DNA of 64,000 nt from Guillardia theta CCMP2712 (lineage: Eukaryota; Protista; Cryptophyta), in NCBI RefSeq assembly GCF_000315625.1, contig NW_005434663.1, forward strand, positions 310,001 to 374,000, given 5' to 3'. The first letter of the stretch is position 1, and every line of letters begins with the position of its first letter. Below the pieces are notes generated by a model that was not told the origin of the DNA, made no database searches, and saw nothing but the letters and a program-made list of their open reading frames with translations. Positions 26,101 to 40,600 of the stretch are shown here, one piece after another. The position numbers were made by a program, and so were the translations under genes.

Positions 26101-28363
26101 AGAGAGTGAGGGAGGAGAGGAGAGAGCGTCTGGACGTCAGGTGGCAATAGAGGGGGATGGTCCAGTCTAACCTCTTCTTCTTCGCCTTCGTCGTGTTGGC
26201 TTTGACCGAGTTGGTTCCCTTCTTGCTGACGTACTCGAGAGACGAGATGACGGAGACATTCATCTCCTTGTTCTTCTTCTTCCTCTTCGACTTGGCCGGC
26301 AAATCTGAAGTTGTCGTCATTGCCACGTCATCATCATCATCATCATCATCTTCAGCTGCAATCTCTGCTACACACCGGCGTTGGCAATTGGTATCTGAAT
26401 GTCAAGAATCTCGTTGTCGTTGTCATTCTTCTCTTTTGTCCCCATCAGCGACAGCCATGATCGCACATAACGGCTACCTGCCTCTTCCACCTTCTTCAGT
26501 GCTTGAACCCGCTTCAGCCTCCCTCGCAGTCTCGAAACGAACACTTTGCTGTACTGGAACTCATCGTACACCCTATCATCGCCCTTGTTCCCCATCTCTC
26601 TGCTCAACACACAAGACAGTCAGCACGATCATCATGGATTCACACTCCCATCACTTTTCGCCAGCAGTGGTAGGCATAAGAGCTTGCTTTGCGAACTTGA
26701 CCAGGTCGCCTTTGGTACCATCCTGCAGCAGCATGAGGGGAGAGCAGAGCAGTTGTCTTCCAGGGCGACCTGTCGGTCACACTCGATGTCTGAAATCTCC
26801 TTGAGCTGATTTACTAAAGTTTCAACCTCCGCAAGGTGCATGATCCGAAGTCTGTCAGGCAACAACATCAGTACATAACCTTCTCTACATGCTTGTACCA
26901 CCGTTGCGAAGGGGAGAACTCTGACCAAACTTGCCCGTTCTTTTCCAAGTCATCCACCTTGCACAGAGTTTCTTCACACCGGCAGCAGCGCTTGCACTCA
27001 CTCTTACCAGGTTGTACCAGATGCGCTGGTCCAACTTCGCCTGCCTCTCCTCAACAAGCTGCTCCATCGTCTCCTCGTCCAGCATCTCATCCTCGTCTAC
27101 CTCTGCATCGATCTCTTTCACCCGGTGCGCACATATCGACCGCAGCTTCTGCATCCAGTCAAGCCTGTCCCAGGACACTTCTTTGTCTCCAAGAGCATTC
27201 AGCTCGTTTGCCACCTTCCTCCTAAAGTTTGGATCCGTGTCCATTACTTTCAGCCTCGCCGCCTCCACGATGGCCACTCGCAAGCTCTCCTTCTCATCAC
27301 CCCCCACCACTATGTGATCTTCAGAGTACACCCCATCCCCGTCCGACGTCGAGCCCTCCAGGTCCCTGAACAAGAGACTCCAGTCCTCCCTCATCCCAGC
27401 AGGAATCTGTTCCAACTTCATCGGCTCCAGCCGGACTATATCCGCCATGCCCAGCATGATCTTCCAGTTCCTCTTCCCTCGCACGTTGATGTCGTAGGAC
27501 CAGGTCAGCTTCTGCGCTTGCGTATCTAGTAGGAAATATCGTTCCTTCCAGAACTGAGGGTCCCTTGTAGACTGTACCTTCAGCCATCCTTTCTTTTGTA
27601 GCGCATACCCCTGCCTCTCCTCCTCTGCCTGGATCTCGTTCCTGGTCTTCAGCGTCGACCGCTCCCATCGATCGTGACTTCCTGGTCGTGCTGCAAAGTG
27701 GCTTCAACAGAAGATTCACCCAATCACTTGCTCTCTCACCATCGCCTATCACCCTCATGGTTCCTGGAGCAAAGTTCCTGTATGTGTTTCTCACGTCCAG
27801 CTCCTGCAGTTCAGTAGAGCATGAGAATGCTGAGTTTGATGGTTACAGTTGTGTAGGTGCTGTCCTGGTTGTAGTGGCTATGGTTATGTTGTTGGTGATG
27901 ATGGTGATGGTGATGGTGATGGTGTTGGTGTTGGTGTTGGTGATGGTGCTGGTGGTGGTGATGGTGGTGGTGTTGGGGATGGTGCTGGTGGTGGTGATGG
28001 TGGTGGTGTTGGGGATGGTGATGTCGACGATGAAAATAATGTTGATATGATATGATATGATGGTGATGAAACATCGAAGGATGATGATGCCGACAACAGA
28101 GATGACTATGATAACAATCTTTCGAGGAGAGATACCATCTGCGTCCTCTCATTTCCGTGCCTGTTCTCCTGCGCATGAAACGCCTGTTCCAGGGAGCCTT
28201 CTTATTAGTATTCCATGCAGAGATTTCGCAAACTCAACATACAGGAACGAGCCTGCGATAGATGGCAGCGATGTACTCGTCATCGATGTTCCTCTTGGTC
28301 TCGTCGTCACGATAGAGCTCCAGCTTCTTCCTCTTCCCTCCCTCCATGTCGCTCTGACCCATC
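23140..28363 (-). CDS. Membrane protein with two PH domains and C-terminal DUF898/YjgN-like repeats, multi-exon
   Basis: PH start QKKGWLKVQSTRDPQFWKERYFLLDT (~27600-27510, frame of ORF 26885-27484). PH end VLADTEEEARTWELTL. DUF898-like FKGR..EFGRLWLKNFILFITTLGLH..QWFDEN, plus similar exons at ~24220-24335 and ~23760-23920. Ends approximate. Confidence 0.7.
27890..28030. repeat. Intronic (GGT/GAT)n low-complexity tract with a 30-bp internal duplication
   Basis: gatggtgctggtggtggtgatggtggtggtgttggg repeated; lies between exons of the PH gene. Confidence 0.8.
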
Positions 28364-28596
28364 GATGACGCTGGTGGCGTCGACATGGTCCCTGGTTGAA
28401 AAATCCAGACAGAGACGGAGGTGGTTCTCCGATTGGGGTCACTACCCGTACTTAATAGTGGTTTCAGATGGGTAGGGGTATATCAAAGTAGGGGGTACTG
28501 TGATCAAGTTTGACAGCCATCAAACCCGAAAATGAAAACATCAGGGGGAGGAGAGTGGGAGCGAGGAGCGGGAGGATAGTTGGGGCAGAGAGGATG

Positions 28597-29184
28597 GAGG
28601 AGAGGAGCACAAGTGATAGCAAGGAGCAAGAGGGAGGAGAGGAGTACAAGTGATAGCAAGGAGCAAGAGGGAGGAGAGGAGCACAAGTGATAGCAAGGAG
28701 CAAGAGGGAGGAGAGGAGCACAAGTGATAGCAAGGAGCAAGAGGGAGGAGAGGAGCACAAGTGATAGCAAGGAGCAAGAGGGAGGAGAGGAGCACAAGTG
28801 ATAGCAAGGAGCAAGAGGGAGGAGAGGAGCACAAGTGATAGCAAGGAGCAAGAGGGAGGAGAGGAGCACAAGTGATAGCAAGGAGCAAGAGGGAGGAGAG
28901 GAGCACAAGTGATAGCAAGGAGCAAGAGGGAGGAGAGGAGCACAAGTGATAGCAAGGAGCAAGAGGGAGGAGAGGAGCACAAGTGATAGCAAGGAGCAAG
29001 AGGGAGGAGAGGAGCACAAGTGATAGCAAGGAGCAAGAGGGAGGAGAGGAGCACAAGTGATAGCAAGGAGCAAGAGGGAGGAGAGGAGCACAAGTGATAG
29101 CAAGGAGCAAGAGGGAGGAGAGGAGCACAAGTGATAGCAAGGAGCAAGAGGGAGGAGAGGAGTACAAGTGATAGCAAGGAGCAG
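28597..29184. repeat. 37-bp minisatellite, 16 copies (GAG[C/T]ACAAGTGATAGCAAGGAGCAAGAGGGAGGAGAG)
   Basis: Period 37 (28608, 28645 ... 29163). Copies 2 and 16 carry T, the others C. No spacers. Confidence 0.97.
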
Positions 29185-29279
29185 AAGGTTTTACGTAGCC
29201 CAAAGTTGTGTGACGAAGCCCTTTCTGAATCCCCTCCCCCGTATGCTGCAGGACCCTAAAGGATCTTTGTGATTTTGCA

Positions 29280-32200
29280 ATGAGGCCTTCGGCTAGGATG
29301 CTTCTCTTGTTCGTCTCCTTGATCTGCTTTCAAGACCACTTCAGCTCTGCGAGGAGACGTCAAAGTGATCCTTTCCTGTCTGTTCTCCTCTCCGCTCTAA
29401 CGTCTTGTCAAGGTCACGAAGAGCTGCTAGGAAGGATACGAGAGCAGAAGACCGATTATTTCCAGATCCATTCCATCCTCAGCGAGTTGCATAGCCGGCA
29501 GCCTGTCTACCTGACTTCATTTCTAAGGGATCACATTGAAGAGATGGCGAAGTACTATCATGGACATGCTATGCAGGTGCCTCCCGATCGACTCTGCATG
29601 GACTGACATCTGTCGCCAGACTGCTTGCGAGCATTATGGAGAGATCCCTGAGAAGGCGGAGGCGATTCATTTTGACATGTACCATGCTCGACAGATAGAA
29701 GGAGTGAGTCTTGAAGGACATGCGAGCAAGGGCGGTTATTATCCTGCAAGGTGCTGGCAAGCCACGTGAGCAGGATCAGAGAAGAGACGAGCAGGGGAGA
29801 GCTGCAGACGATAGTGGTTACTGACGGGGAGGACACGCTGGATGTCGGAGATGTTGGGACCTGGTCTGCTGGTTAAGATTCTTCCACTGATTCCTTGATG
29901 CCTCCAAGTGAAATACCTTCAGGGCTGGGAATGAGCAAGGCGATGATGCACGCTGCCATGGCAGGGTTTCATCCGAAGGCCATCCTCTGCGTCGTACTTG
30001 GTGACGTGTCAAGCTCGGATGACGTGTCGATGGAGATGCTGATGGTGGTGGAGGAGGAGAATGTGGTTGAACAGGATGTGGTGGTGGTAGTGGTGGTGCT
30101 CACGATGATGATGATGACGACGGCGGTGATGATCATAATGATTCTGACAATTGTGTATTTGCATCTCTCAGACTCTGGCACTGACAACGAGCGGTTGAGA
30201 GGCCATTCTCACTATCGTGGGAACGCACACAGACGGTTTCGAGATAGCTCTTGTCTTTGCTTTTGCCTCTGCAGATTCTCCAGTGCCATTCCAATCCCCT
30301 TTTCCTCTCCCCCCCCTCTCTCTCTTCCCCTTGCCCCTCCCTTTCATCTCCCTCCCCTTCCTTTGGTTCCTCTGCCTCCTTCTTTTTCTCGTGTCACTCG
30401 GATCGCTGGCTGCAGACGTCGAGGGGAGGAGATCGCCTTTCTGTGGCACGAGCTCTTGCGAGCTCTGAGAACTTTGACACCCAACGTGCTCATTCACATC
30501 GACTGTCCGAACCCTGGCAGCAGGTGTCTGCGGTCTTGCCCGCGGAGGTTGGGAGGTGACGCAGCTTTGTCAAGCATCATGCAAGTCATCGAGGAACATT
30601 CCAAGTCCTCTCCGGTCTTCAACGACGGGCTGGATGGTCGAGCGACGATAGTAGCAACCAGGCCCAGCAGTTGTGTCACGCTGATACATCTGTCAGGTCC
30701 TGTCTGCTATTCTTGCAATGACGAGGGTCCGATCGAGCGATAACAAGGATTTTCATATGGACCATGTTGATCTCTTGTATGCGATGTTTGCTGTTAGAGT
30801 AATCCTGATGAAGGTTTGGAAGCCGCCAGTGCCGATGATGATGAAGGATGTGTACTTGTTGTATGGTGAACTACTGCTGTTGTACATCTGGTGAAAGTGA
30901 AAGCCTGAAAAGGCCCTCGACATCTCATCGAGCACATCGCAAACTTGCTGGGTGAGATCTGATGCTCAGCTTACATCCATGTCATGTGGTTTGAGTTTGT
31001 TGTTGCAGTCTTCACGCTTGAGAGCATCGGGGTTCCGACTCCGATGGCGATGAAGGTAACGGTCAGTTGTGCATCTGTGAGGAGCTAAGGCATGAACAGG
31101 GCATTTGGCTGATGGATCCAAAGATGGTCCCGAATGATTGTTTGCTTCACCTCTGACCATCTCGCACAAAAGGGACTTTACACCCTTGAAGACAGGCATC
31201 ACTACGTAAGGAGTGTGCTACGTTAGCATTAGAAGGTGATTGAAGTTGGCAGAAATCAAAGTTCAGAAAGCCCCTGCCGGCGAGACTGAGAGGTTGGTTG
31301 TCAAGGACAACTTCTCTACACGAGCTCAAAAGCTCATCATGCTTGCTAGGACTCCATCGAAATGTGTCAACAGTCGTGGAGGTCTGTGAACTCCGTGGGA
31401 ACAGAGGAGGAGACATTTCTGACATGTGACAAAGGGGATCCGAGCGACGATCTTGATCGGAGCCTCGGGGATCAGGTCAGTGCAAGCATTGCGATGCTTC
31501 CAAATTGTATGACGAGAGGGGATGGAAGGGGAGCGTTCGATCGGGATGTGCTGCGAATCTTGCACAAGAACCATGAGAGGTGTGTATCTTATTTGTTTTG
31601 GTTGCGAATGCTTGCTTCCTTCTGCCTTCAACAATCTCCGAGAGTGAAAACCACTCTTCATCTTCAAGGCCCGGCATTATCGTCCTCTCCAACACTCAGG
31701 GGAAGGCTGAGTGTTCGTCAGCGGATACTTGGCATCATACGACAGGTCGGAGATTGTTACCCCTGCTTGCTTTCCCTTGTTTCTTTCTTTCTGCTCGCCT
31801 TCCTCTCCATCTCCTGCTCTCCTGTCGTTCGCTCCTCCCATGCCCCTCTCCTCCGCTTCTCCCGCCCTCCCCACCCCTGCTCTCCTCCGCTACTTCGTAC
31901 CTTCATCTCGTCTGCTCTGTGAACTCCTCCTCCTCGTCTTGTCCTGTGGTCGGCCCAACTCCAGTCATCTCCTCCCAGGCAACGGCAAGACCCTCTACGT
32001 GGGAGGAGACGACCCTCTGCCGTATCGTCCACTCGGCTATGAAGGAGTCGCTCTCATCCCGTCGAGGGTGAGGAGCGATTGCTGAGATCGATGGATCCAT
32101 CCATCATGAGAGCGGCACTGACATCACTTTGACATCTGTGTTGAGCTGTCTGTGTCATGACACGTGTGGAACTATCTTCTCATCTTCAGACCACCTTGAC

Positions 32201-33144
32201 ATCATGTGTTGATGACTCTCAGACTTGTTCGATGATGATGCTGAACTGGTCTCAACAATGTCGGCAGGCGACCTCTCTGTTTGTCTATCCAGGAATCTCG
32301 CTGGCGACTTTCGGTGAAGTCACGCAAGGTCGTTGATGTGGGAGTGAAGGTTCTTGCAGCTGCTGGCATCTCGAGCATTACTCCCAGCATGTTGCAGGTG
32401 ATTGCAGATCTTGTTATCACTTCGTCTTCTTCTTTCATCTTTACTTTGTTGCACTTTGTATTTTGTTTCTCGCATCTTGGCTCAGGTCGCTGCTGAAACT
32501 TTAGCTCGCATGGCATCGATCGGTACGTCCAAGATCAAGTAAGATAACAGATCTGATGCTCGTGCCATCAACAGATGAAATCTCTTACGGGAGTCTGTTT
32601 CCTCGCCTGTCTCTGCTCAAAGACATCTCAGGTAGAAGAGACGGCAGGACAAGACATGAAAACATGAGAGATGAAGATCATCATGGTCATTTTCACTTTG
32701 ACTTGTCGCAGTAAGGATCGCTGCGGAAATCATCAGGGTAGCACAGAAGGAGCAGGTCTGAAGGAGGACAAGTTGCAAACCGTCGCTGCTGACGTACAAG
32801 CGCAGAAGACAAACAAGGTCGTTCCGGAAGGATACAAAGAGCTTCTCAGCTTCCTACAAGTGGGATCGGGTTTTCAGACCCATCGCTGCGATTCTCACGC
32901 CCGATGCAGAGCTTGCAAGACCTGGATGCTGATGACGAGCTTGTATCGTCGTACAGGTGAGAGTTCGACATCTCCCCGTGTCTCATGAAGGTGTCGCAGC
33001 TGGCAGGAGGGTGAGAAGGTGGAAGTCAAGGTCGGAGGAGAGGAAGGAGCCTTCCTCGCTGGAGCAGGAGGTCTGACGGTGATGATGGCGAGAAGGGGGA
33101 AGACGCGACAAGTGACATGATTGCAGAAGAGGATCGAACTGTGA
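29280..33144 (+). CDS. Malic enzyme-like protein with N-terminal signal peptide and degenerate catalytic/NAD-binding motifs (probable pseudoenzyme), many short exons
   Basis: Spliced segments are colinear with malic enzyme: LSELHSRQPVYLTSFLRDHIEEM, TACEHYG, IVVTDGEDTLDVGDVG, GMSKAMMH, VLDSGTDNERL, PNVLIHIDC, VFNDGLDGRATIVLSAIL, IRATILIGASG, GAFDRDVLRIL, RPGIIVLSNTQGKAECS, LFVYPGISL, GSLFPRLSLLKDIS, VRIAAEII. Confidence 0.85.
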
Positions 33145-33236
33145 GACGTCGACCTCCTGTACTGAGTAGTGCAGCTTTGACAAGATGAGCATGATATTCG
33201 AAATGAAACAATCTTCTGACCGACTACCGAAACGAG

Positions 33237-34242
33237 ATGGAGGGACGTGGGATGAATGCAACCTGCTTGAGGGAGCGACATTCCACCCTCCCTCCCCTGG
33301 CGAAGGTTGACGAGGTGAGTATGGTAGCACCTGGGCAGCCCGAGGATGGAGGATCTCGATGGAGCGAGTACGAGAGAGCAATCCCCCCAGACAAGTGAGG
33401 AGGCAATGTTCCGAAGAAGGCGACAAGACTTGGAGTCCGTGACCCTGCTCAAGATACGTAAAATGATGTTCCGAAGAAGGCGGACGCCCGATCACGATAC
33501 CTCGAGCCCCCAATACGTCACGATTCGGCGAGGAGACGCACATGCGCCTGCTTCGTCCCAAGAAGACTAAACTTGGAGTCCGTGACCCTGCTTTCCCCCG
33601 GCTTCTCGACGACTCAAGATCCTTCTCGATCTCAGCAGGCAGCAGGCATGGAGCAGAAAAGAAGCTCTTATGGAGTCTGCTTGCGAGATATGTGAGGTCT
33701 CGGGGCTGACCGATCTGATATGGAGGCTTTTCGGATCTCAGGTCCCTTCATAGCCCCCTCGTCGTCTCCTTGCGTCACCCTCGCTGTCCGCCGCTCAGCC
33801 CGACACCATGTGCTCTGCTCGTCCGCGATCCTCCCGGTCCTGCTCCTGCTCGTCCCGCGCTCCCTGCCCCTCTTGTTCCTCTGCATCTCCGGACGCCATG
33901 AGCTCTCCTCCCCGGCGCCTCTCGGACAGCGACCCGCCTGCGTCGCCCTCGTCGCACTTGTCCTGCTCCTGCTCCTCTGCCTCTCCCTGCTCCTCTTGTT
34001 CCTCGGTCTCTCCCTGCTCCTCTTTGTCCTTGTCCTCGTCCCCTCCTCCTGTCTGCTCCCTCAAGGCCCTCCAGCTCGCCCGCCTCCGCGCCGCCATCGC
34101 CTACATCGAGCGCCTCCAGCGCCTCCACGGCGGCAGCGTCGACGGGGAGCGTCTGCCTTGCGTGATCCGACGGGACGAGGCGGCGAGAAGGGAGGAGGAG
34201 GGGGGATGTGATAGAGTCGAGGATACAAGTAAACTACGATAA
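33237..34242 (+). CDS. Hypothetical protein (copy 1), last exon LARLRAAIAYIERLQRLHGG
   Basis: Strong GC3 codon bias at 34060-34200. Possible first exon MEGRGMNA..VDE|gtgag. Internal structure unresolved. Confidence 0.4.
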
Positions 34243-34291
34243 GCCAAGCAGACGAGTCAACTTGAGTCAGTGACGGGAAAGTCAGTGACGG

Positions 34292-36310
34292 GGTCCCGAA
34301 TGATTGTTTGCTTCACCTCTGACCATCTCGCACAAAAGGGACTTTACACCCTTGAAGACAGGCATCACTACGTAAGGAGTGTGCTACGTTAGCATTAGAA
34401 GGTGATTGAAGTTGGCAGAAATCAAAGTTCAGAAAGCCCCTGCCGGCGAGACTGAGAGGTTGGTTGTCAAGGACAACTTCTCTACACGAGCTCAAAAGCT
34501 CATCATGCTTGCTAGGACTCCATCGAAATGTGTCAACAGTCGTGGAGGTCTGTGAACTCCGTGGGAACAGAGGAGGAGACATTTCTGACATGTGACAAAG
34601 GGGATCCGAGCGACGATCTTGATCGGAGCCTCGGGGATCAGGTCAGTGCAAGCATTGCGATGCTTCCAAATTGTATGACGAGAGGGGATGGAAGGGGAGC
34701 GTTCGATCGGGATGTGCTGCGAATCTTGCACAAGAACCATGAGAGGTGTGTATCTTATTTGTTTTGGTTGCGAATGCTTGCTTCCTTCTGCCTTCAACAA
34801 TCTCCGAGAGTGAAAACCACTCTTCATCTTCAAGGCCCGGCATTATCGTCCTCTCCAACACTCAGGGGAAGGCTGAGTGTTCGTCAGCGGATACTTGGCA
34901 TCATACGACAGGTCGGAGATTGTTACCCCTGCTTGCTTTCCCTTGTTTCTTTCTTTCTGCTCGCCTTCCTCTCCATCTCCTGCTCTCCTGTCGTTCGCTC
35001 CTCCCATGCCCCTCTCCTCCGCTTCTCCCGCCCTCCCCACCCCTGCTCTCCTCCGCTACTTCGTACCTTCATCTCGTCTGCTCTGTGAACTCCTCCTCCT
35101 CGTCTTGTCCTGTGGTCGGCCCAACTCCAGTCATCTCCTCCCAGGCAACGGCAAGACCCTCTACGTGGGAGGAGACGACCCTCTGCCGTATCGTCCACTC
35201 GGCTATGAAGGAGTCGCTCTCATCCCGTCGAGGGTGAGGAGCGATTGCTGAGATCGATGGATCCATCCATCATGAGAGCGGCACTGACATCACTTTGACA
35301 TCTGTGTTGAGCTGTCTGTGTCATGACACGTGTGGAACTATCTTCTCATCTTCAGACCACCTTGACATCATGTGTTGATGACTCTCAGACTTGTTCGATG
35401 ATGATGCTGAACTGGTCTCAACAATGTCGGCAGGCGACCTCTCTGTTTGTCTATCCAGGAATCTCGCTGGCGACTTTCGGTGAAGTCACGCAAGGTCGTT
35501 GATGTGGGAGTGAAGGTTCTTGCAGCTGCTGGCATCTCGAGCATTACTCCCAGCATGTTGCAGGTGATTGCAGATCTTGTTATCACTTCGTCTTCTTCTT
35601 TCATCTTTACTTTGTTGCACTTTGTATTTTGTTTCTCGCATCTTGGCTCAGGTCGCTGCTGAAACTTTAGCTCGCATGGCATCGATCGGTACGTCCAAGA
35701 TCAAGTAAGATAACAGATCTGATGCTCGTGCCATCAACAGATGAAATCTCTTACGGGAGTCTGTTTCCTCGCCTGTCTCTGCTCAAAGACATCTCAGGTA
35801 GAAGAGACGGCAGGACAAGACATGAAAACATGAGAGATGAAGATCATCATGGTCATTTTCACTTTGACTTGTCGCAGTAAGGATCGCTGCGGAAATCATC
35901 AGGGTAGCACAGAAGGAGCAGGTCTGAAGGAGGACAAGTTGCAAACCGTCGCTGCTGACGTACAAGCGCAGAAGACAAACAAGGTCGTTCCGGAAGGATA
36001 CAAAGAGCTTCTCAGCTTCCTACAAGTGGGATCGGGTTTTCAGACCCATCGCTGCGATTCTCACGCCCGATGCAGAGCTTGCAAGACCTGGATGCTGATG
36101 ACGAGCTTGTATCGTCGTACAGGTGAGAGTTCGACATCTCCCCGTGTCTCATGAAGGTGTCGCAGCTGGCAGGAGGGTGAGAAGGTGGAAGTCAAGGTCG
36201 GAGGAGAGGAAGGAGCCTTCCTCGCTGGAGCAGGAGGTCTGACGGTGATGATGGCGAGAAGGGGGAAGACGCGACAAGTGACATGATTGCAGAAGAGGAT
36301 CGAACTGTGA
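34292..36310 (+). pseudogene. 5'-truncated duplicate of the malic enzyme-like gene (C-terminal half only)
   Basis: The duplication starts inside the gene, so copy 2 lacks the signal peptide and N-terminal domain exons. Confidence 0.75.
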
Positions 36311-36402
36311 GACGTCGACCTCCTGTACTGAGTAGTGCAGCTTTGACAAGATGAGCATGATATTCGAAATGAAACAATCTTCTGACCGACTACCGAAACG
36401 AG

Positions 36403-37468
36403 ATGGAGGGACGTGGGATGAATGCAACCTGCTTGAGGGAGCGACATTCCACCCTCCCTCCCCTGGCGAAGGTTGACGAGGTGAGTATGGTAGCACCTGG
36501 GCAGCCCGAGGATGGAGGATCTCGATGGAGCGAGTACGAGAGAGCAATCCCCCCAGACAAGTGAGGAGGCAATGTTCCGAAGAAGGCGACAAGACTTGGA
36601 GTCCGTGACCCTGCTCAAGATACGTAAAATGATGTTCCGAAGAAGGCGGACGCCCGATCACGATACCTCGAGCCCCCAATACGTCACGATACCGGTCACA
36701 GCACCCCGTAGTGACACCTTTAGATGTTCACCCGGGGCTATCCCAGAGATTCGGCGAGGAGACGCACATGCGCCTGCTTCGTCCCAAGAAGACTAAACTT
36801 GGAGTCCGTGACCCTGCTTTCCCCCGGCTTCTCGACGACTCAAGATCCTTCTCGATCTCAGCAGGCAGCAGGCATGGAGCAGAAAAGAAGCTCTTATGGA
36901 GTCTGCTTGCGAGATATGTGAGGTCTCGGGGCTGACGGATCTGATATGGAGGCTTTTCGGATCTCAGGTCCCTTCATAGCCCCCTCGTCGTCTCCTTGCG
37001 TCACCCTCGCTGTCCGCCGCTCAGCCCGACACCATGTGCTCTGCTCGTCCGCGATCCTCCCGGTCCTGCTCCTGCTCGTCCCGCGCTCCCTGCCCCTCTT
37101 GTTCCTCTGCATCTCCGGACGCCATGAGCTCTCCTCCCCGGCGCCTCTCGGACAGCGACCCGCCTGCGTCGCCCTCGTCGCACTTGTCCTGCTCCTGCTC
37201 CTCTGCCTCTCCCTGCTCCTCTTGTTCCTCTGCCTCTCTCTGCTCCTCTTTGTCCTTGTCCTCGTCCCCTCCTCCTGTCTGCTCCCTCAAGGCCCTCCAG
37301 CTCGCCCGCCTCCGCGCCGCCATCGCCTACATCGAGCGCCTCCAGCGCCTCCACGGCGGCAGCGTCGACGGGGAGCGTCTGCCTTGCGTGATCCGACGGG
37401 ACGAGGCGGCGAGAAGGGAGGAGGAGGGGGGATGTGATAGAGTCGAGGATACAAGTAAACTACGATAA
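36403..37468 (+). CDS. Hypothetical protein (copy 2 of 33237-34242, with an extra 60 bp)
   Basis: Duplicate of copy 1. Confidence 0.4.
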
Positions 37469-37689
37469 GCCGAGCAGACGAGTCGACTTGAGTCAGTGAC
37501 GGGAACCTGGAGGAGGGAGGGAGGGAGGGAGGGAGGGATGTTGGTACGAATGTACATGAATAGTTTTCAATGGACTTCTTCAATACTTTGACATCATATT
37601 AGCTTTTTCAACCTGTTCTCACATTTCTTTCTCTCAATCTCTTGTCGACTTCTCCGTCTCCGATCATTTCTAGAAAGTTTCTCTCCTCC

Positions 37690-40600
37690 TTATGTCACAT
37701 GATGGACGCGTGTGTCTGCAATCGCACCAGCCGTCTCAGCAACCCGCCTCCACCTCTACTCCTCTCCTCTCTCTCTTCTGCTATCCTCTCCTTCTTTCCC
37801 CTTCTGCTCTGCTTCTCGTCTCCCCTCTTGCTATCGTCACCTCCTCTCCTCTCCCCACCGCACCGCTCCTCTCCTCCCTCCCCTCCTCTACTCCTTTTCT
37901 TCTTGTCACCTTGCGCAAGTTGACGCTGCCGCCCTGCGGATTATCCACGACCACCTTAAGTGCGTCATCTGCTATGAGCACGAAGCAGAGGAGGGGAGGA
38001 GAGAGGAGAGGAGGGGAGGGGAGGGAACAGGTGAGAAAGAAAGAGGAGGAGACGGGTGAGAAGGGGAAGTGGAGGGGAGGGGAGGGGAGGTAGGGGGGCA
38101 GGGGAGGAGAGGAGAAGGAGGAGAGAGGAGAGGAGGATAGAAAGGAGAAGCAATAAGTAACAATGACAAGTTTCTTACAAACTCTGAGTTCGAGACATTT
38201 CTTGTGCGCGAGGAAGTCTTCAAACTTGAATGTTTGCCAGCGGGCAAGACGCGATCAATCTCTGACAACCAGGCGTTCCTGAACATGATCTGAGTTGTTG
38301 ATACCACAAGGGAGTAGGAGTAGGAGTAGGAGGATGAGAATAAGCAAGAGTAGGAGTAGGAATAGGAGGAGGAAGAGTAGGAGTATGAGGAGGAGGAGGA
38401 GGAGGAGGAGGAGGAGGAGGAGGAGGAGGAGGAGGAGTAGGAGGAGGAGTAGGAGGAGGAGTAGGAGGAGTAGGATTAAGAGCCGATGATGATGATTGAA
38501 GGGATGTTGATGGCAATTTGCTGAGCATTGCGGATGATTGTAGCATGAAAAGATGAGGCAAAGACAGAAGTTCACATGTCTATGGGTTCGTCCTTCGGAT
38601 CAGAATGAGTTGGTCGTATCGAATTCATGAAGTTGTCTTCTTGCGGATCAGAATGAGTTCGTCGTATCGAATTCATGAAGTTGTCTTCTTGCCGCTGAAT
38701 CGCAATCATGATCGATGTTGAATCGTTTCTTCTCATCTTCTTACCTCATTCTGTGCTGCAGGGTGAATTTGGAAGAGATTGTGAAAACCCTGGAAAATGA
38801 CCATCAAGACCTTCAGCATTAAGATTGCTATCATATCAGCATAACATAGATCCTCTCCTCTTCATCTCTGTCTTATCAGGATGGCATGAAGCAGCAACAT
38901 ATTGCTGCTCACGTTGGTGCTCGAACGTCGTCCTTCCGGCTTGTTGAGTTTTCGTCTCTCGGTGTCAACTTCTCTCGGCATGGTTCTCCTCGTCTTCTTT
39001 GCTTCCTCCTTTGTATGTTTCGACGACAGATTGTCGATCTTGTTTTCAAGCGCTTCCAATCTGCAATCATCGAGGCAACTTCATTACTATTGCCTTTGAT
39101 ATGTTCCCCTCCTCCCTTCCTCCCCTAATCCTCCTCCTCGAATTGCAATTTTCATCACCATCGTTCTCAAACCGAATAGACTCGATCAACAACAATCAGT
39201 ACATGTAACCATCCTCTTCATGATCAGGATCAGGATCAGGATCAGGATCAGGATCAGGATCAGGATCAGGATCAGGATCAGGATCAGGATCATATAGCTG
39301 TGAAAGCAGGAGAGAGCAACCTTTCCATGATAGCAGTATTATGCTTGTTCACAGCAGCCATGAATTGCATCATCATTTCCTGCATGCCGTCAGGTCAGCA
39401 TAGAGTTTCGATCGACTTTGAAACCTTGGATTCATCTCCTCCCCTTGACGTCTTTGAGTCTTCCACGTGCGATATGCTCGAGCTTTGCTGCTGCTCCTCT
39501 TCCCTCGTCCTCTTGCTGACGTCAACCCCAAGCGTTCTCTTCGTGATGTCTCCCACCGCGAGCTTCAGCGCGAACATGACGAAGCCGAAGTGCTGGTCGT
39601 CCCTCATGACAGCTGGGAGAGAGTTGGCCAGGTTTCTCTCGGCGAAGCTCAACATCTGGATCCGCAAAGTCCTCTCGAACGCGTCTTTGTCCAGCTCGCC
39701 ATCAGCATCGCACAGAGAGTGCTGGAGGGTGATGGCGTTGTACTCGTCCTGGGAGAAATTGATCCTGGGCTTGAACTCCATCTTCTTAAGCCCCTCATAG
39801 AGCTCCTGCCAGCTCAGCGCGCCGGATCGGTCGACGTCGAGGCGGTCGAAGAGGTCGGAGCAGCGTTTCTTCATCTCCTCATCGGACTTGACGTTGATGA
39901 AGGTCTGAAGGAGCGGGTCGATGGATGTTGTTGTCCCCTCCCCCCTTTCTCGCTCCAGCTTCTCCCGCTCGTTCTTGTCCTTCTCCCTCCTTGTCGCCGT
40001 GGTGAAGTTGTCTAGGAGGACGGCGATGACGACGGGGAGAAGGGTAAAGGAGACGATGATGAGGAAGGAGACGAAGAACAGAGCCGATCCTGGAGTCATC
40101 GAGCCATCCGCGTTGAAGAGATCGCGGGAGATGCTTGCCCAGTCATCGAACGTTGACACCTGACAACTGATTTACATCTCCCCTCCTCCTCTCTACCTCT
40201 ATCCTGCCTTCTTTCCTCTCCCTCCGCCTGCCTGCCTGCCTGCATGTCTCCTTCCTCCTTCCTTACTCTCTCTCTGCCTTTCTCACTCGTTCCCCAGCAT
40301 CTCTTGATCACTCACTTGAAACATGGTGAAGATTCCCTGCGAAGAACAATTAAAGGCGAGGCTCCCCTAAGACGCGAGACGATCGCAGGACCTGGGCGAA
40401 GGTTTTGAAGTGATTCTCGTCTCGCTTGCGGAAGAAGCTCACTCCCAGCACCTTGCAAGAGTTTCAGCGGAGGGACAGGGCAGTCAGAGAGACAACTGAC
40501 CGCATAGATGGCCATGACGAGAAAGACGATCAGCATCGCGTTGAGAACAGGCCTGACGTGTCAAAGTCAATCTTGACCATGGCTGACCCTCCTGTGTTGT

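What the first reader, a model, noticed from the sequence alone, without database searches (positions are those of the whole stretch)
29280..33144. Secretory-pathway malic-enzyme pseudoenzyme
Seen: short exons reconstruct a full-length malic-enzyme fold with most catalytic motifs altered (human ME2 numbering). YTPTVG->HGHAMQ (Tyr112), DGERIL->DGEDTL (Arg165), QFEDF->HIDCP (metal ligands Glu255/Asp256), NDDIQGT->NDGLDGR (Asp279), Rossmann GAGEAG->GPRHLI and NN->TS; Lys183 (MSKA) and LSN are retained. It starts with a hydrophobic signal peptide (MRPSARMLLLFVSLICF). One splice reading ends in KRIEL*, a KDEL-like ER-retention signal; an alternative GTGAG donor gives a different tail. Inference: a metabolic enzyme repurposed as a non-catalytic scaffold, sensor or subunit in the ER or periplastid compartment.
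Basis: partly seen in the sequence, partly recalled or inferred. Interest (0 to 1): 0.75.

Follow-up and report, generated by a model that had tools for sequence, protein, structure and literature searches.

The report
Secretory malic-enzyme-like pseudoenzyme, Guillardia theta
This is an intact 27-exon gene of the alga Guillardia theta for a malic-enzyme-shaped protein that has lost its cofactor, metal and substrate sites, carries secretory and ER-retention-type signals, and belongs to a small, conserved, undescribed family, although it is almost silent in the RNA data checked.

Summary
On the + strand, 29280-33144 splits into 27 exons, all with GT-AG introns. They give an uninterrupted 633-codon frame ending KRIEL-stop. 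It is collinear with malic enzyme (ME) over the whole fold.

The genome is Guillardia theta CCMP2712. The gene is the mis-spliced model GUITHDRAFT_134382, annotated as hypothetical.

It is not a decaying pseudogene:
- A Hanusia phi transcript carries the same altered motifs at 78% identity.
- About five lineages from marine and other metagenomes form one clade with it (SH-aLRT 100).
- Those lineages evolve at dN/dS 0.11-0.25.

All members examined lack GxGxxG, two of the three metal ligands, Arg165 and the Asn-Asn pair. All N-termini that could be read are signal-peptide-like. The two metagenome lineages whose C-terminus could be read end HIDL, next to KRIEL here.

Expression in G. theta is almost nil: 2 reads, and no RNA contigs.

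Best reading: a non-catalytic ME-fold protein of the ER lumen or secretory pathway, ligand unknown. The periplastid alternative has no support. It is a new variant of a known kind, of moderate interest. The scan had noted this same stretch before (s1-450828), not other DNA.

The parts
29280..33144 (+). Whole coding span of the ME-like gene (27 exons, 633 codons). It corresponds to the JGI model GUITHDRAFT_134382, corrected.
29280..29576 (+). Exon 1. It encodes the signal-peptide-like N-terminus (29280-29351, MRPSARMLLLFVSLICFQDHFSSA), the conserved N-terminal helices, and HGHAMQ (29559-29576) in place of YTPxVG (Tyr112 -> His).
29620..29703 (+). Exon 2 (TACEHYGEI...).
29751..29871 (+). Exon 3, with DGEDTL at 29823-29840 (Arg165 -> Asp).
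29923..30000 (+). Exon 4, with the Lys183-equivalent codon at 29937-29939 (this position is Arg in Hanusia).
30172..30235 (+). Exon 5 (DSGTDNE...). The join to exon 6 is confirmed by the Hanusia transcript (NAHRRRRG).
30416..30523 (+). Exon 6, with HIDCP at 30495-30509 (Glu255 -> Asp, Asp256 -> Cys).
30575..30650 (+). Exon 7, with NDGLDGR at 30621-30641 (Asp279 -> Gly).
30697..30765 (+). Exon 8, the start of the family-specific insertion before the Rossmann strand.
30814..30865 (+). Exon 9 (VWKPPVPMMMKDVYLLY-).
30913..30951 (+). Exon 10, with GPRHLI in place of the GxGxxG dinucleotide-binding motif.
31009..31055 (+). Exon 11 (VFTLESIGVPTPMAMK, a family signature).
31100..31126 (+). Exon 12, a 27-nt micro-exon (GIWLMDPKM). 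The tandem duplication starts at its last base.
31173..31205 (+). Exon 13.
31253..31381 (+). Exon 14.
31435..31475 (+). Exon 15 (GIRATILIGASGI-).
31529..31579 (+). Exon 16.
31669..31745 (+). Exon 17, with LSN at 31685-31693.
31979..32067 (+). Exon 18.
32268..32313 (+). Exon 19, with Thr-Ser at 32271-32276 in place of Asn466/Asn467. I use the GTGAAG donor at 32314 instead of the JGI model's 31-nt intron.
32360..32397 (+). Exon 20.
32486..32522 (+). Exon 21.
32575..32631 (+). Exon 22.
32712..32755 (+). Exon 23.
32806..32859 (+). Exon 24.
32910..32956 (+). Exon 25.
33000..33078 (+). Exon 26.
33127..33144 (+). Exon 27: KRIEL plus stop, an ER-retrieval-type C-terminus. It is reached only if the 48-nt intron 33079-33126 is spliced out.
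34292..37505 (+). Tandem second copy of 31126-34279. It holds exons 13-27 and the downstream sequence, at 100% identity over 2399 nt and then 99.2% over 758 nt, with about 57 extra nt. It is a partial gene copy, modelled by JGI as GUITHDRAFT_102720, which also ends KRIEL.

Best explanation
The locus is an intact, single-copy gene of Guillardia theta. It encodes a malic-enzyme-fold protein that can no longer carry out the ME reaction.

What is lost:
- The GxGxxG NAD(P) motif.
- Two of the three Mn/Mg ligands.
- The catalytic Tyr.
- Arg165 and the Asn-Asn substrate contacts.

These losses are shared by a monophyletic family that also includes Hanusia phi and several unidentified eukaryotes from marine and other metagenomes. 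The loss is therefore old, and the protein has been kept by purifying selection for another role.

Inferred mechanism:
1. The N-terminal signal peptide takes the protein into the ER. Cleavage is most plausibly after SSA at residue 24.
2. The result is a soluble protein of about 68 kDa.
3. When the last 48-nt intron is removed it ends in RIEL. That motif matches the experimentally defined KDEL-receptor motif and would keep the protein in the ER lumen, which in cryptophytes is continuous with the outermost plastid compartment.
4. There it would act as a binding or structural module built on the old ME scaffold. The ligand or partner is unknown.

Shown: gene integrity, homology and fold, motif losses, family conservation and selection.
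Inferred: signal-peptide function, ER retention, the non-catalytic role.
Unknown: the ligand, and the conditions of expression.
For: - Gene integrity: 27 GT-AG exons and an open 633-codon frame.
- No hidden canonical motifs in the locus.
- ME homology and fold. A model of family member P0028 has pLDDT 79, and its 50 best PDB matches are all malic enzymes (E about 1e-22). The Atlas model of P0151 matches ME at TM 0.75.
- Orthologue transcript in Hanusia phi with the same altered motifs, at 78% identity over 188 columns. The in-frame retained-intron stretches of that transcript are unalignable with the G. theta introns.
- Family clade with SH-aLRT 100 on a long stem, and a large score gap to canonical MEs (E <= 1e-87 against >= 1e-26).
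- Shared derived insertion and motifs.
- dN/dS 0.11-0.25 among the metagenome members.
- Signal-peptide-like N-termini in G. theta and in four metagenome lineages, the latter followed by NAT, NST or NCT.
- C-termini HIDL in two lineages, KRIEL here and in the JGI model P0229.
- G. theta BiP ends HDEL and an ERD2 gene is present.
- In the human reporter screen, position -3 of KDEL signals tolerates every residue except Pro, and Asp at -2 works partly (PMC2140024).
Against: - Expression in G. theta is almost undetectable. Two 60-nt reads were found in about 764 million letters of one RNA run. One of them lies in a bin where it must touch a predicted intron. No contig was found in three other runs, and 13 runs carrying the species label hold next to none of the sampled words. 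I could run no positive-control gene.
- The splice pattern, including the KRIEL tail and introns I4, I8 and I26 (all multiples of 3), rests on homology and gene prediction, not on G. theta cDNA.
- The signal peptide was judged by hydropathy and the -3/-1 rule only.
- HIDL and RIEL are non-canonical compared with the organism's own HDEL.
- No partner or ligand is known.
- The Hanusia transcript is a fragment with apparently retained introns.
Confidence: 0.68

Rival explanations
1. In G. theta itself the gene is a recently silenced relic. The family is functional elsewhere, but this copy is no longer used and has simply not yet picked up disabling mutations.
For: Near-absence of reads and RNA contigs. 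The 3' half sits in an unusual, very recent tandem duplication. A 588-nt satellite lies about 100 nt upstream of the ATG.
Against: There is no stop, frameshift or broken splice site across 1902 coding nt and 26 introns. The protein is 78% identical to the expressed Hanusia orthologue, while the intron-derived stretches are unalignable. Low expression in batch culture is common for condition-specific genes.
Confidence: 0.13
2. It is still an enzyme that uses the ME scaffold for different chemistry, or a different cofactor or metal geometry. The kept Lys/Arg at position 183, the DGE and GTDN motifs, and Asp in place of Glu255 would serve this.
For: Several pocket-lining motifs stay strongly conserved in the family: DGE, GD[LV]G, K/R183, AAMAG, D.GTDN. 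The strength of purifying selection is compatible with catalysis.
Against: All three classes of ME functional residue (dinucleotide fold, metal ligands, substrate contacts) are replaced, and replaced differently in the two subclades: DGED against DGEH, IDCP against YDSL, NDGLD against NEALD, LSN against LRH. That pattern is typical of relaxed catalytic constraint. No NAD(P)-dependent chemistry is expected in the ER lumen (established knowledge, not tested here).
Confidence: 0.1
3. It is targeted beyond the ER, to the periplastid compartment or the plastid, by a bipartite signal. The KRIEL tail would then be a chance or unused reading.
For: Cryptophyte plastid and periplastid proteins start with a signal peptide. 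About 20 residues rich in Ser and Arg lie between the hydrophobic core and the conserved domain. Phe follows Cys16, so an alternative cleavage site would expose Phe.
Against: In the metagenome relatives the conserved domain follows the signal peptide almost directly, with an N-glycosylation sequon and no transit-peptide-like extension. x-I-[ED]-L C-termini recur. The -3/-1 rule favours cleavage after SSA, which exposes Arg, not Phe.
Confidence: 0.07

Closest known systems
Canonical eukaryotic malic enzymes (for example human ME2, and the G. theta paralogue at G000:C1:34534-35073)
   Same: Same two Pfam domains (PF00390, PF03949). Collinear over the whole fold. The predicted structure matches ME crystal structures. 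The Lys183 position is basic.
   Different: Tyr112, Arg165, Asp256, Asp279, GxGxxG and Asn466/467 are all replaced. There is a 16-residue family-specific insertion before the Rossmann strand. The protein has a signal peptide in place of a mitochondrial or plastid presequence (or none), and a C-terminal extension ending x-I-[ED]-L.
Trichomonas vaginalis AP65 (a hydrogenosomal malic enzyme reported as a secreted, surface adhesin; PMC2222631, PMC1079839, abstracts listed)
   Same: An ME-fold protein reported in a non-metabolic role outside its usual compartment.
   Different: By my own knowledge (not taken from those abstracts), AP65 is a catalytically competent decarboxylating ME that moonlights. 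It has no signal sequence (abstract of PMC2222631). The protein here has lost the active site and has a classical signal peptide.
Soluble ER residents with non-PROSITE KDEL variants (Raykhel et al. 2007, PMC2140024; carboxylesterases with x-I/T-E-L tails)
   Same: An N-terminal signal peptide plus a C-terminal basic-x-Glu-Leu tetrapeptide. Position -3 is permissive.
   Different: Unrelated fold. Retrieval of RIEL or HIDL by a cryptophyte ERD2 has not been tested. The organism's BiP uses HDEL.
Other pseudoenzymes derived from metabolic enzymes, including a G. theta glutamine synthetase II paralogue noted earlier by this scan (s1-430534, an unchecked AI note)
   Same: An intact gene with catalytic residues replaced and a conserved orthologue in another cryptophyte.
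   Different: A different enzyme family. The GS II case is reported as expressed, whereas this gene is nearly silent. This one is a secretory-pathway protein.

Membership tests
Malic enzyme superfamily (homology; Pfam PF00390 + PF03949) | Significant sequence match to both ME domains, in the canonical order | tested here: met
   Single G. theta exons fall below the Pfam cut-offs (19.9 and 16.3 bits). Family members reach 69.8 bits (PF00390) and 85.7 bits (PF03949).
Malic enzyme superfamily (homology; Pfam PF00390 + PF03949) | ME three-dimensional fold | tested here: met
   AlphaFold model of family member P0028: pLDDT 79.3. Its 50 best PDB matches are all MEs, at E 1e-22 to 4e-15 and TM by query mostly 0.54-0.64. 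This was tested on a relative. The spliced G. theta model was not folded.
Catalytically active malic enzyme (EC 1.1.1.38-40) | GxGxxG dinucleotide-binding motif | tested here: not met
   GPRHLI in G. theta; GHFQVT, GPSNVV and GPLHVT in relatives.
Catalytically active malic enzyme (EC 1.1.1.38-40) | Divalent-metal ligands Glu255, Asp256, Asp279 (ME2 numbering, from established knowledge) | tested here: not met
   Asp, Cys and Gly in G. theta and Hanusia; Asp, Ser and Ala in the metagenome members.
Catalytically active malic enzyme (EC 1.1.1.38-40) | Catalytic Tyr112 / Lys183 pair | tested here: not met
   Tyr is replaced by His (Gln in relatives). Lys is kept in G. theta and the metagenome members but is Arg in Hanusia.
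Catalytically active malic enzyme (EC 1.1.1.38-40) | Substrate contacts Arg165, Asn421, Asn466, Asn467 | tested here: not met
   Arg165 -> Asp (His in relatives). Asn466/467 -> Thr-Ser (Ala-Ser in relatives). Asn421 is kept here but is His in the relatives.
Catalytically active malic enzyme (EC 1.1.1.38-40) | Measured oxidative decarboxylation of malate | not testable with these tools
   Needs recombinant protein.
Soluble ER-lumenal residents with KDEL-type retrieval | Cleavable N-terminal signal peptide and no other membrane span | tested here: inconclusive
   Residues 7-17 form the most hydrophobic window (Kyte-Doolittle 3.01), preceded by a basic n-region, and SSA is a plausible cleavage site. 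No 19-residue window exceeds 1.6. The same layout occurs in four relatives. No trained predictor such as SignalP was available.
Soluble ER-lumenal residents with KDEL-type retrieval | C-terminal tetrapeptide accepted by the KDEL receptor | tested here: inconclusive
   RIEL fits the rules found for human receptors: Arg at -4, any residue but Pro at -3, Glu at -2, Leu at -1 (PMC2140024). It depends on splicing the 48-nt intron 33079-33126, for which there is no cDNA. The relatives end HIDL.
Soluble ER-lumenal residents with KDEL-type retrieval | The organism has the retrieval system | tested here: met
   PF00810 (ERD2) hits at G000:C18:779241-779805. The BiP-type HSP70 at C52 ends HDEL.
Soluble ER-lumenal residents with KDEL-type retrieval | Observed ER localisation | not testable with these tools
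   Needs tagging or fractionation.
Unprocessed pseudogene | Stops, frameshifts or broken splice sites | tested here: not met
   None in 27 exons and 26 introns.
Unprocessed pseudogene | Neutral evolution (dN/dS about 1) | tested here: not met
   dN/dS is 0.11-0.25 among the metagenome members. The exons are 78% identical to Hanusia while the intron-derived stretches do not align. The G. theta-Hanusia ratio could not be computed because no Hanusia nucleotide sequence was available.
Unprocessed pseudogene | No transcription | tested here: inconclusive
   2 reads in the RNA run sampled and no RNA contigs. No control gene was laid. Hanusia has a transcript.
Cryptophyte plastid / periplastid proteins (bipartite targeting signal) | Signal peptide followed by a transit-peptide-like extension (Phe at +1 for stromal import; established knowledge) | tested here: inconclusive
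   Only about 20 residues lie between the hydrophobic core and the conserved domain. The favoured cleavage site exposes Arg. The relatives have no such extension. No dedicated predictor was available.

The most novel reading that the evidence does not exclude
GUITHDRAFT_134382 is the first named member of an undescribed, ancient family of ER-lumenal malic-enzyme-fold pseudoenzymes. The family is shared by cryptophytes and by abundant, still unidentified marine algae. It keeps the ME scaffold (a basic residue at the Lys183 position, the DGE, GD[LV]G and GTDN motifs) for a new ligand-binding or chaperone-like role in the secretory pathway.
Probability: 0.5. Interest if true: 0.6.

Novelty: new variant of a known kind. 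Interest (0 to 1): 0.5.

Why it matters
Malic enzymes are textbook cytosolic, mitochondrial or plastid enzymes. I found no description of a conserved, catalytically stripped ME derivative that enters the secretory pathway: there were no relevant papers for 'malic enzyme' with 'pseudoenzyme', for 'malic enzyme-like', or for the locus tag.

If the reading is confirmed, it adds a metabolic-enzyme fold to the short list of lumenal pseudoenzymes. It would also give a handle on ER or chloroplast-ER biology in algae with complex plastids.

Practically, it shows that both public gene models at this locus are wrong in parts, and that the 'hypothetical protein' belongs to a definable family with diagnostic motifs.

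Tried and rejected
- RNA support. One read-laying run on 29200-33400 with one raw RNA run and three runs kept as contigs gave 2 reads, no joints and no contigs. The splice sites therefore could not be confirmed from G. theta RNA.
- Close paralogues in the genome. Exon-based searches found only the locus itself. A search with metagenome member P0028 found only canonical MEs and exon 1. There is no second family member in G. theta.
- Apparent frameshift between 30659 and 30697. I rejected this reading: family alignments place a canonical 46-nt GT-AG intron at 30651-30696.
- The JGI model's 31-nt intron at 32329-32359. I replaced it with a 46-nt intron starting at the GTGAAG donor (32314). That restores the family's length and matches JGI's other model, P0229.
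- Hidden canonical motifs (YTPxVG, FEDF, NDDIQGT, GAGxAG, GNN) in any + frame of 28000-38000: none in the gene.
- The search for related loci with the mixed alignment A1 failed because it had no conserved stretch. With A2 it found only two loci, one of them the organism of P0028.
- Identity of the metagenome organisms. Pfam scans of neighbouring genes, the Atlas and exact cluster look-ups gave no named taxon. ABA4-like and Peptidase_S28 neighbours say only 'probably a photosynthetic eukaryote'.
- Search for a C-terminal Hanusia fragment. It found only the second G. theta model.
- Literature on RIEL as a retrieval signal. The hits were author names.
- No complex prediction was run, because no binding partner is claimed.
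Full report
**Where we are.** The window is G000:C11:310001-374000 of an 87.1-Mb, 669-contig genome. An exact cluster look-up names the protein model at this locus as GUITHDRAFT_134382 / XP_005838432.1 of Guillardia theta CCMP2712. It is annotated as a hypothetical protein; UniRef calls it 'Malic enzyme NAD-binding domain-containing protein'.

- Taken exon by exon and by reference, the Pfam matches are weak: PF00390 E 7e-4 for 29715-29873, E 0.017 for 29877-30740, and PF03949 E 6e-3 for 31577-32068.
- tblastn with the canonical ME of the same genome (a 510-aa open exon at C1, locus L001) gives collinear matches down to E 1e-5.
- The word search with the open stretch 29877-30740 found one relative, a 239-aa EukProt transcript protein of Hanusia phi (P0001). 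It carries the same unusual motifs (HGHAIQ, DGEDTL, HIDCPNP, NDGLDGR) and matches solved MEs at E 1e-10.

**Gene model.** I placed 27 exons using three guides:
- the Hanusia protein;
- the metagenome relatives;
- the parts of the JGI model that map exactly to the genome.

All 26 introns are GT...AG. Twenty of them are 43-57 nt long. The coding sequence is 1902 nt, or 633 codons, with no internal stop, and it ends KRIEL-stop at 33127-33144.

Three points needed care:
- An apparent frame change between 30659 and 30697 is a canonical 46-nt intron (30651-30696). It gives GRATIV-LSAILAM, the same length as in all relatives.
- The Rossmann region consists of exons that the JGI model skips: 30697-30765, 30814-30865, 30913-30951 and the 27-nt exon 31100-31126.
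- A 31-nt JGI intron is better read as a 46-nt intron starting at the GTGAAG donor at 32314.

The junction of exons 5 and 6 is directly confirmed by the Hanusia transcript (NAHRRRRG).

No canonical ME motif is hidden in any + frame of 28000-38000 within the gene.

*Procedural note.* The joined translation was built only inside scripts, in /scratch. It was used for the frame check, a local MAFFT alignment and a tree. It was not sent to any search or folding tool. Those tools received exon references or database proteins only, so a search or fold of the joined G. theta model itself was left out.

**Motifs.** In the alignment with canonical MEs, using ME2 numbering from established knowledge:

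| Canonical | Here | Change |
|---|---|---|
| YTPxVG | HGHAMQ | Tyr112 -> His |
| DGERIL | DGEDTL | Arg165 -> Asp |
| FEDF | IDCP | Glu255 -> Asp, Asp256 -> Cys |
| NDDIQGT | NDGLDGR | Asp279 -> Gly |
| GAGEAG | GPRHLI | dinucleotide motif lost |
| GNN | ATS | Asn466/467 -> Thr-Ser |

The Lys183 position is Lys here but Arg in Hanusia. LSN is kept here but reads LRH in the metagenome relatives.

**A family, not a one-off.**
- The exhaustive representative search with P0001 found only a handful of close hits above the mass of ordinary MEs.
- The profile word search shows a gap between family members (E <= 1e-87) and canonical MEs (E >= 1e-26).
- Members are G. theta, Hanusia phi and about five lineages from ENA/JGI metagenomes, including TARA Oceans scaffolds.
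- They share derived states:
  - [HQ]G[HQ] in place of YTP;
  - DGE[DH];
  - [IYF]D[CS] in place of FEDF (Glu255 -> Asp);
  - N[DE][GA] in place of NDD, followed by LD in most members;
  - a single Gly left of GxGxxG;
  - a roughly 16-residue insertion before the Rossmann strand;
  - LESIGVP;
  - SLF[VL]YP.
- In a tree with 43 canonical MEs the seven family rows form one clade (SH-aLRT 100) on a long stem. Inside it are a G. theta + Hanusia pair (99) and a metagenome group (99).
- G. theta has no second family member.
- A model of member P0028 (pLDDT 79.3, pTM 0.75) has malic enzymes as all 50 of its best PDB matches. The Atlas's own model of P0151 matches ME at TM 0.75.

**Dead gene or living protein?**
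- Among the metagenome members, pairwise Nei-Gojobori dN/dS is 0.11-0.25 wherever dS could be estimated. Examples: 0.25 at dS 0.08, and 0.14 at dS 1.5.
- G. theta and Hanusia are 78% identical over 188 aligned columns. The in-frame stretches that the Hanusia transcript retains at the positions of introns 1 and 4 have no similarity to the G. theta introns.
- No disabling change is seen in the G. theta gene.
- Against this, expression in G. theta is close to nil. The sampled words of the stretch are held only by four 2011 runs of one study, evidently DNA. Thirteen runs under the species label hold next to none of them. Laying one raw RNA run (about 764 million letters read) gave two reads, and three runs kept as contigs gave nothing. 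One of the two reads lies in the bin 30751-30891. A 60-nt read there must touch a predicted intron, or else I8 is not an intron.
- I could not lay a control gene.

I therefore regard the gene as functional but condition-specific or very weakly expressed. I give a recent-relic reading about one chance in eight.

**Targeting.**
- Residues 7-17 (MLLLFVSLICF) are the most hydrophobic 11-residue window of the protein. They follow a basic MRPSAR and precede SSA, a plausible -3/-1 cleavage site. No later 19-residue window looks like a membrane span.
- In four metagenome lineages the gene starts with a comparable hydrophobic segment, followed within a few residues by NAT, NST or NCT. That is what one expects of proteins translocated into the ER.
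- The two metagenome lineages whose last exon is on the contig both end ...ADLVHIDL, although the residues before it differ.
- In G. theta, removing the 48-nt intron 33079-33126 gives ...GGLTKRIEL. JGI's second model at this locus (P0229) makes the same join.
- G. theta BiP ends HDEL and the genome has an ERD2-type receptor.
- In the human reporter screen of Raykhel et al., position -3 accepts every residue except Pro, Arg or His work at -4, and Asp at -2 works partly (PMC2140024). RIEL therefore fits well and HIDL fits less well.
- ER residence is thus a reasonable but unproven inference.
- I see no positive sign of a transit peptide for the periplastid compartment or plastid. In the relatives the conserved domain follows the signal peptide almost at once.

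**Comparison with what is known.** By homology and fold the protein belongs to the ME superfamily, but it fails every tested criterion of an active ME. The nearest functional analogies are:
- ME moonlighting outside its compartment (Trichomonas AP65, a surface-associated adhesin reported to be secreted without a signal sequence);
- lumenal proteins with non-PROSITE KDEL variants.

I found no paper on an ME pseudoenzyme or on this locus.

**Surroundings.**
- A 37-nt satellite (15.9 copies, 99% matches) lies at 28596-29183, about 100 nt upstream of the ATG.
- The segment 31126-34279 is repeated in tandem at 34292-37505. Identity is 100% over 2399 nt, then 99.2% over 758 nt, with about 57 extra nt in the second copy.
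- The second copy therefore holds exons 13-27 only. It is either a very recent partial duplication or an assembly artefact. A transcript could splice exon 12 to either copy and encode the same protein.

**Verdict.** It is a new variant of a known kind, of moderate interest. The interest is limited by the near-silence of the gene in G. theta and by the lack of any clue to the ligand.

Noticed in passing
window 31126-34279 and 34292-37505: A 3.2-kb tandem duplication covers exons 13-27 of the gene plus about 1.1 kb downstream. Identity is 100% over the first 2399 nt, then 99.2% over 758 nt, with about 57 extra nt in the second copy (36691-36747). JGI modelled a truncated gene there (GUITHDRAFT_102720, P0229). 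It is either a real recent duplication or an assembly artefact; this was not resolved.
   Followed up: partly
window 28596-29183: A 37-nt tandem repeat (15.9 copies, 99% matches, purine-rich on the + strand) ends about 100 nt upstream of the start codon. Its role is unknown. A TGATGG hexamer array lies at 27899-28023.
   Followed up: partly
window 29544-33395 (JGI model P0002): The public model GUITHDRAFT_134382 has several faults. It lacks exon 1 (the signal peptide). It reads exon 6 in the wrong frame after an alternative donor inside intron 4. It skips exon 5, the Rossmann-region exons and the 27-nt exon. It uses a 231-nt final intron to a different tail (...AIPPDK).
   Followed up: yes
window 30001-30171 (intron 4) and 29577-29619 (intron 1): Intron 4 is 171 nt, open in frame, and would encode a very hydrophobic stretch. 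The Hanusia phi transcript holds unrelated in-frame stretches of 26 and 15 residues at the positions of introns 4 and 1. These are most simply retained introns in a weakly expressed message.
   Followed up: partly
G000:C1:34534-35073, C3:404132-404748, C39:35032-35598, C41:269031-269673, C11:27878-28571, C45:276959-277255: Six other ME loci exist in the genome (PF00390 search). The one read through (C1) has all canonical motifs. The weak C45 match was not examined.
   Followed up: partly
L032 (Ga0209491_10219757) 517-615: A further metagenome contig (GC 0.37, full of CA/TA microsatellites) carries a single short exon encoding VVLSDGEHVGHAGDLGVWCA. This suggests another, intron-rich member of the family in an AT-rich genome.
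   Followed up: no
L026 1521-1925 (-) and L031 4859-5401 (+): Neighbours of the metagenome family members include an ABA4-like protein (PF14108) and a Peptidase_S28 exon. This is compatible with photosynthetic eukaryotes, but no taxon could be named.
   Followed up: partly
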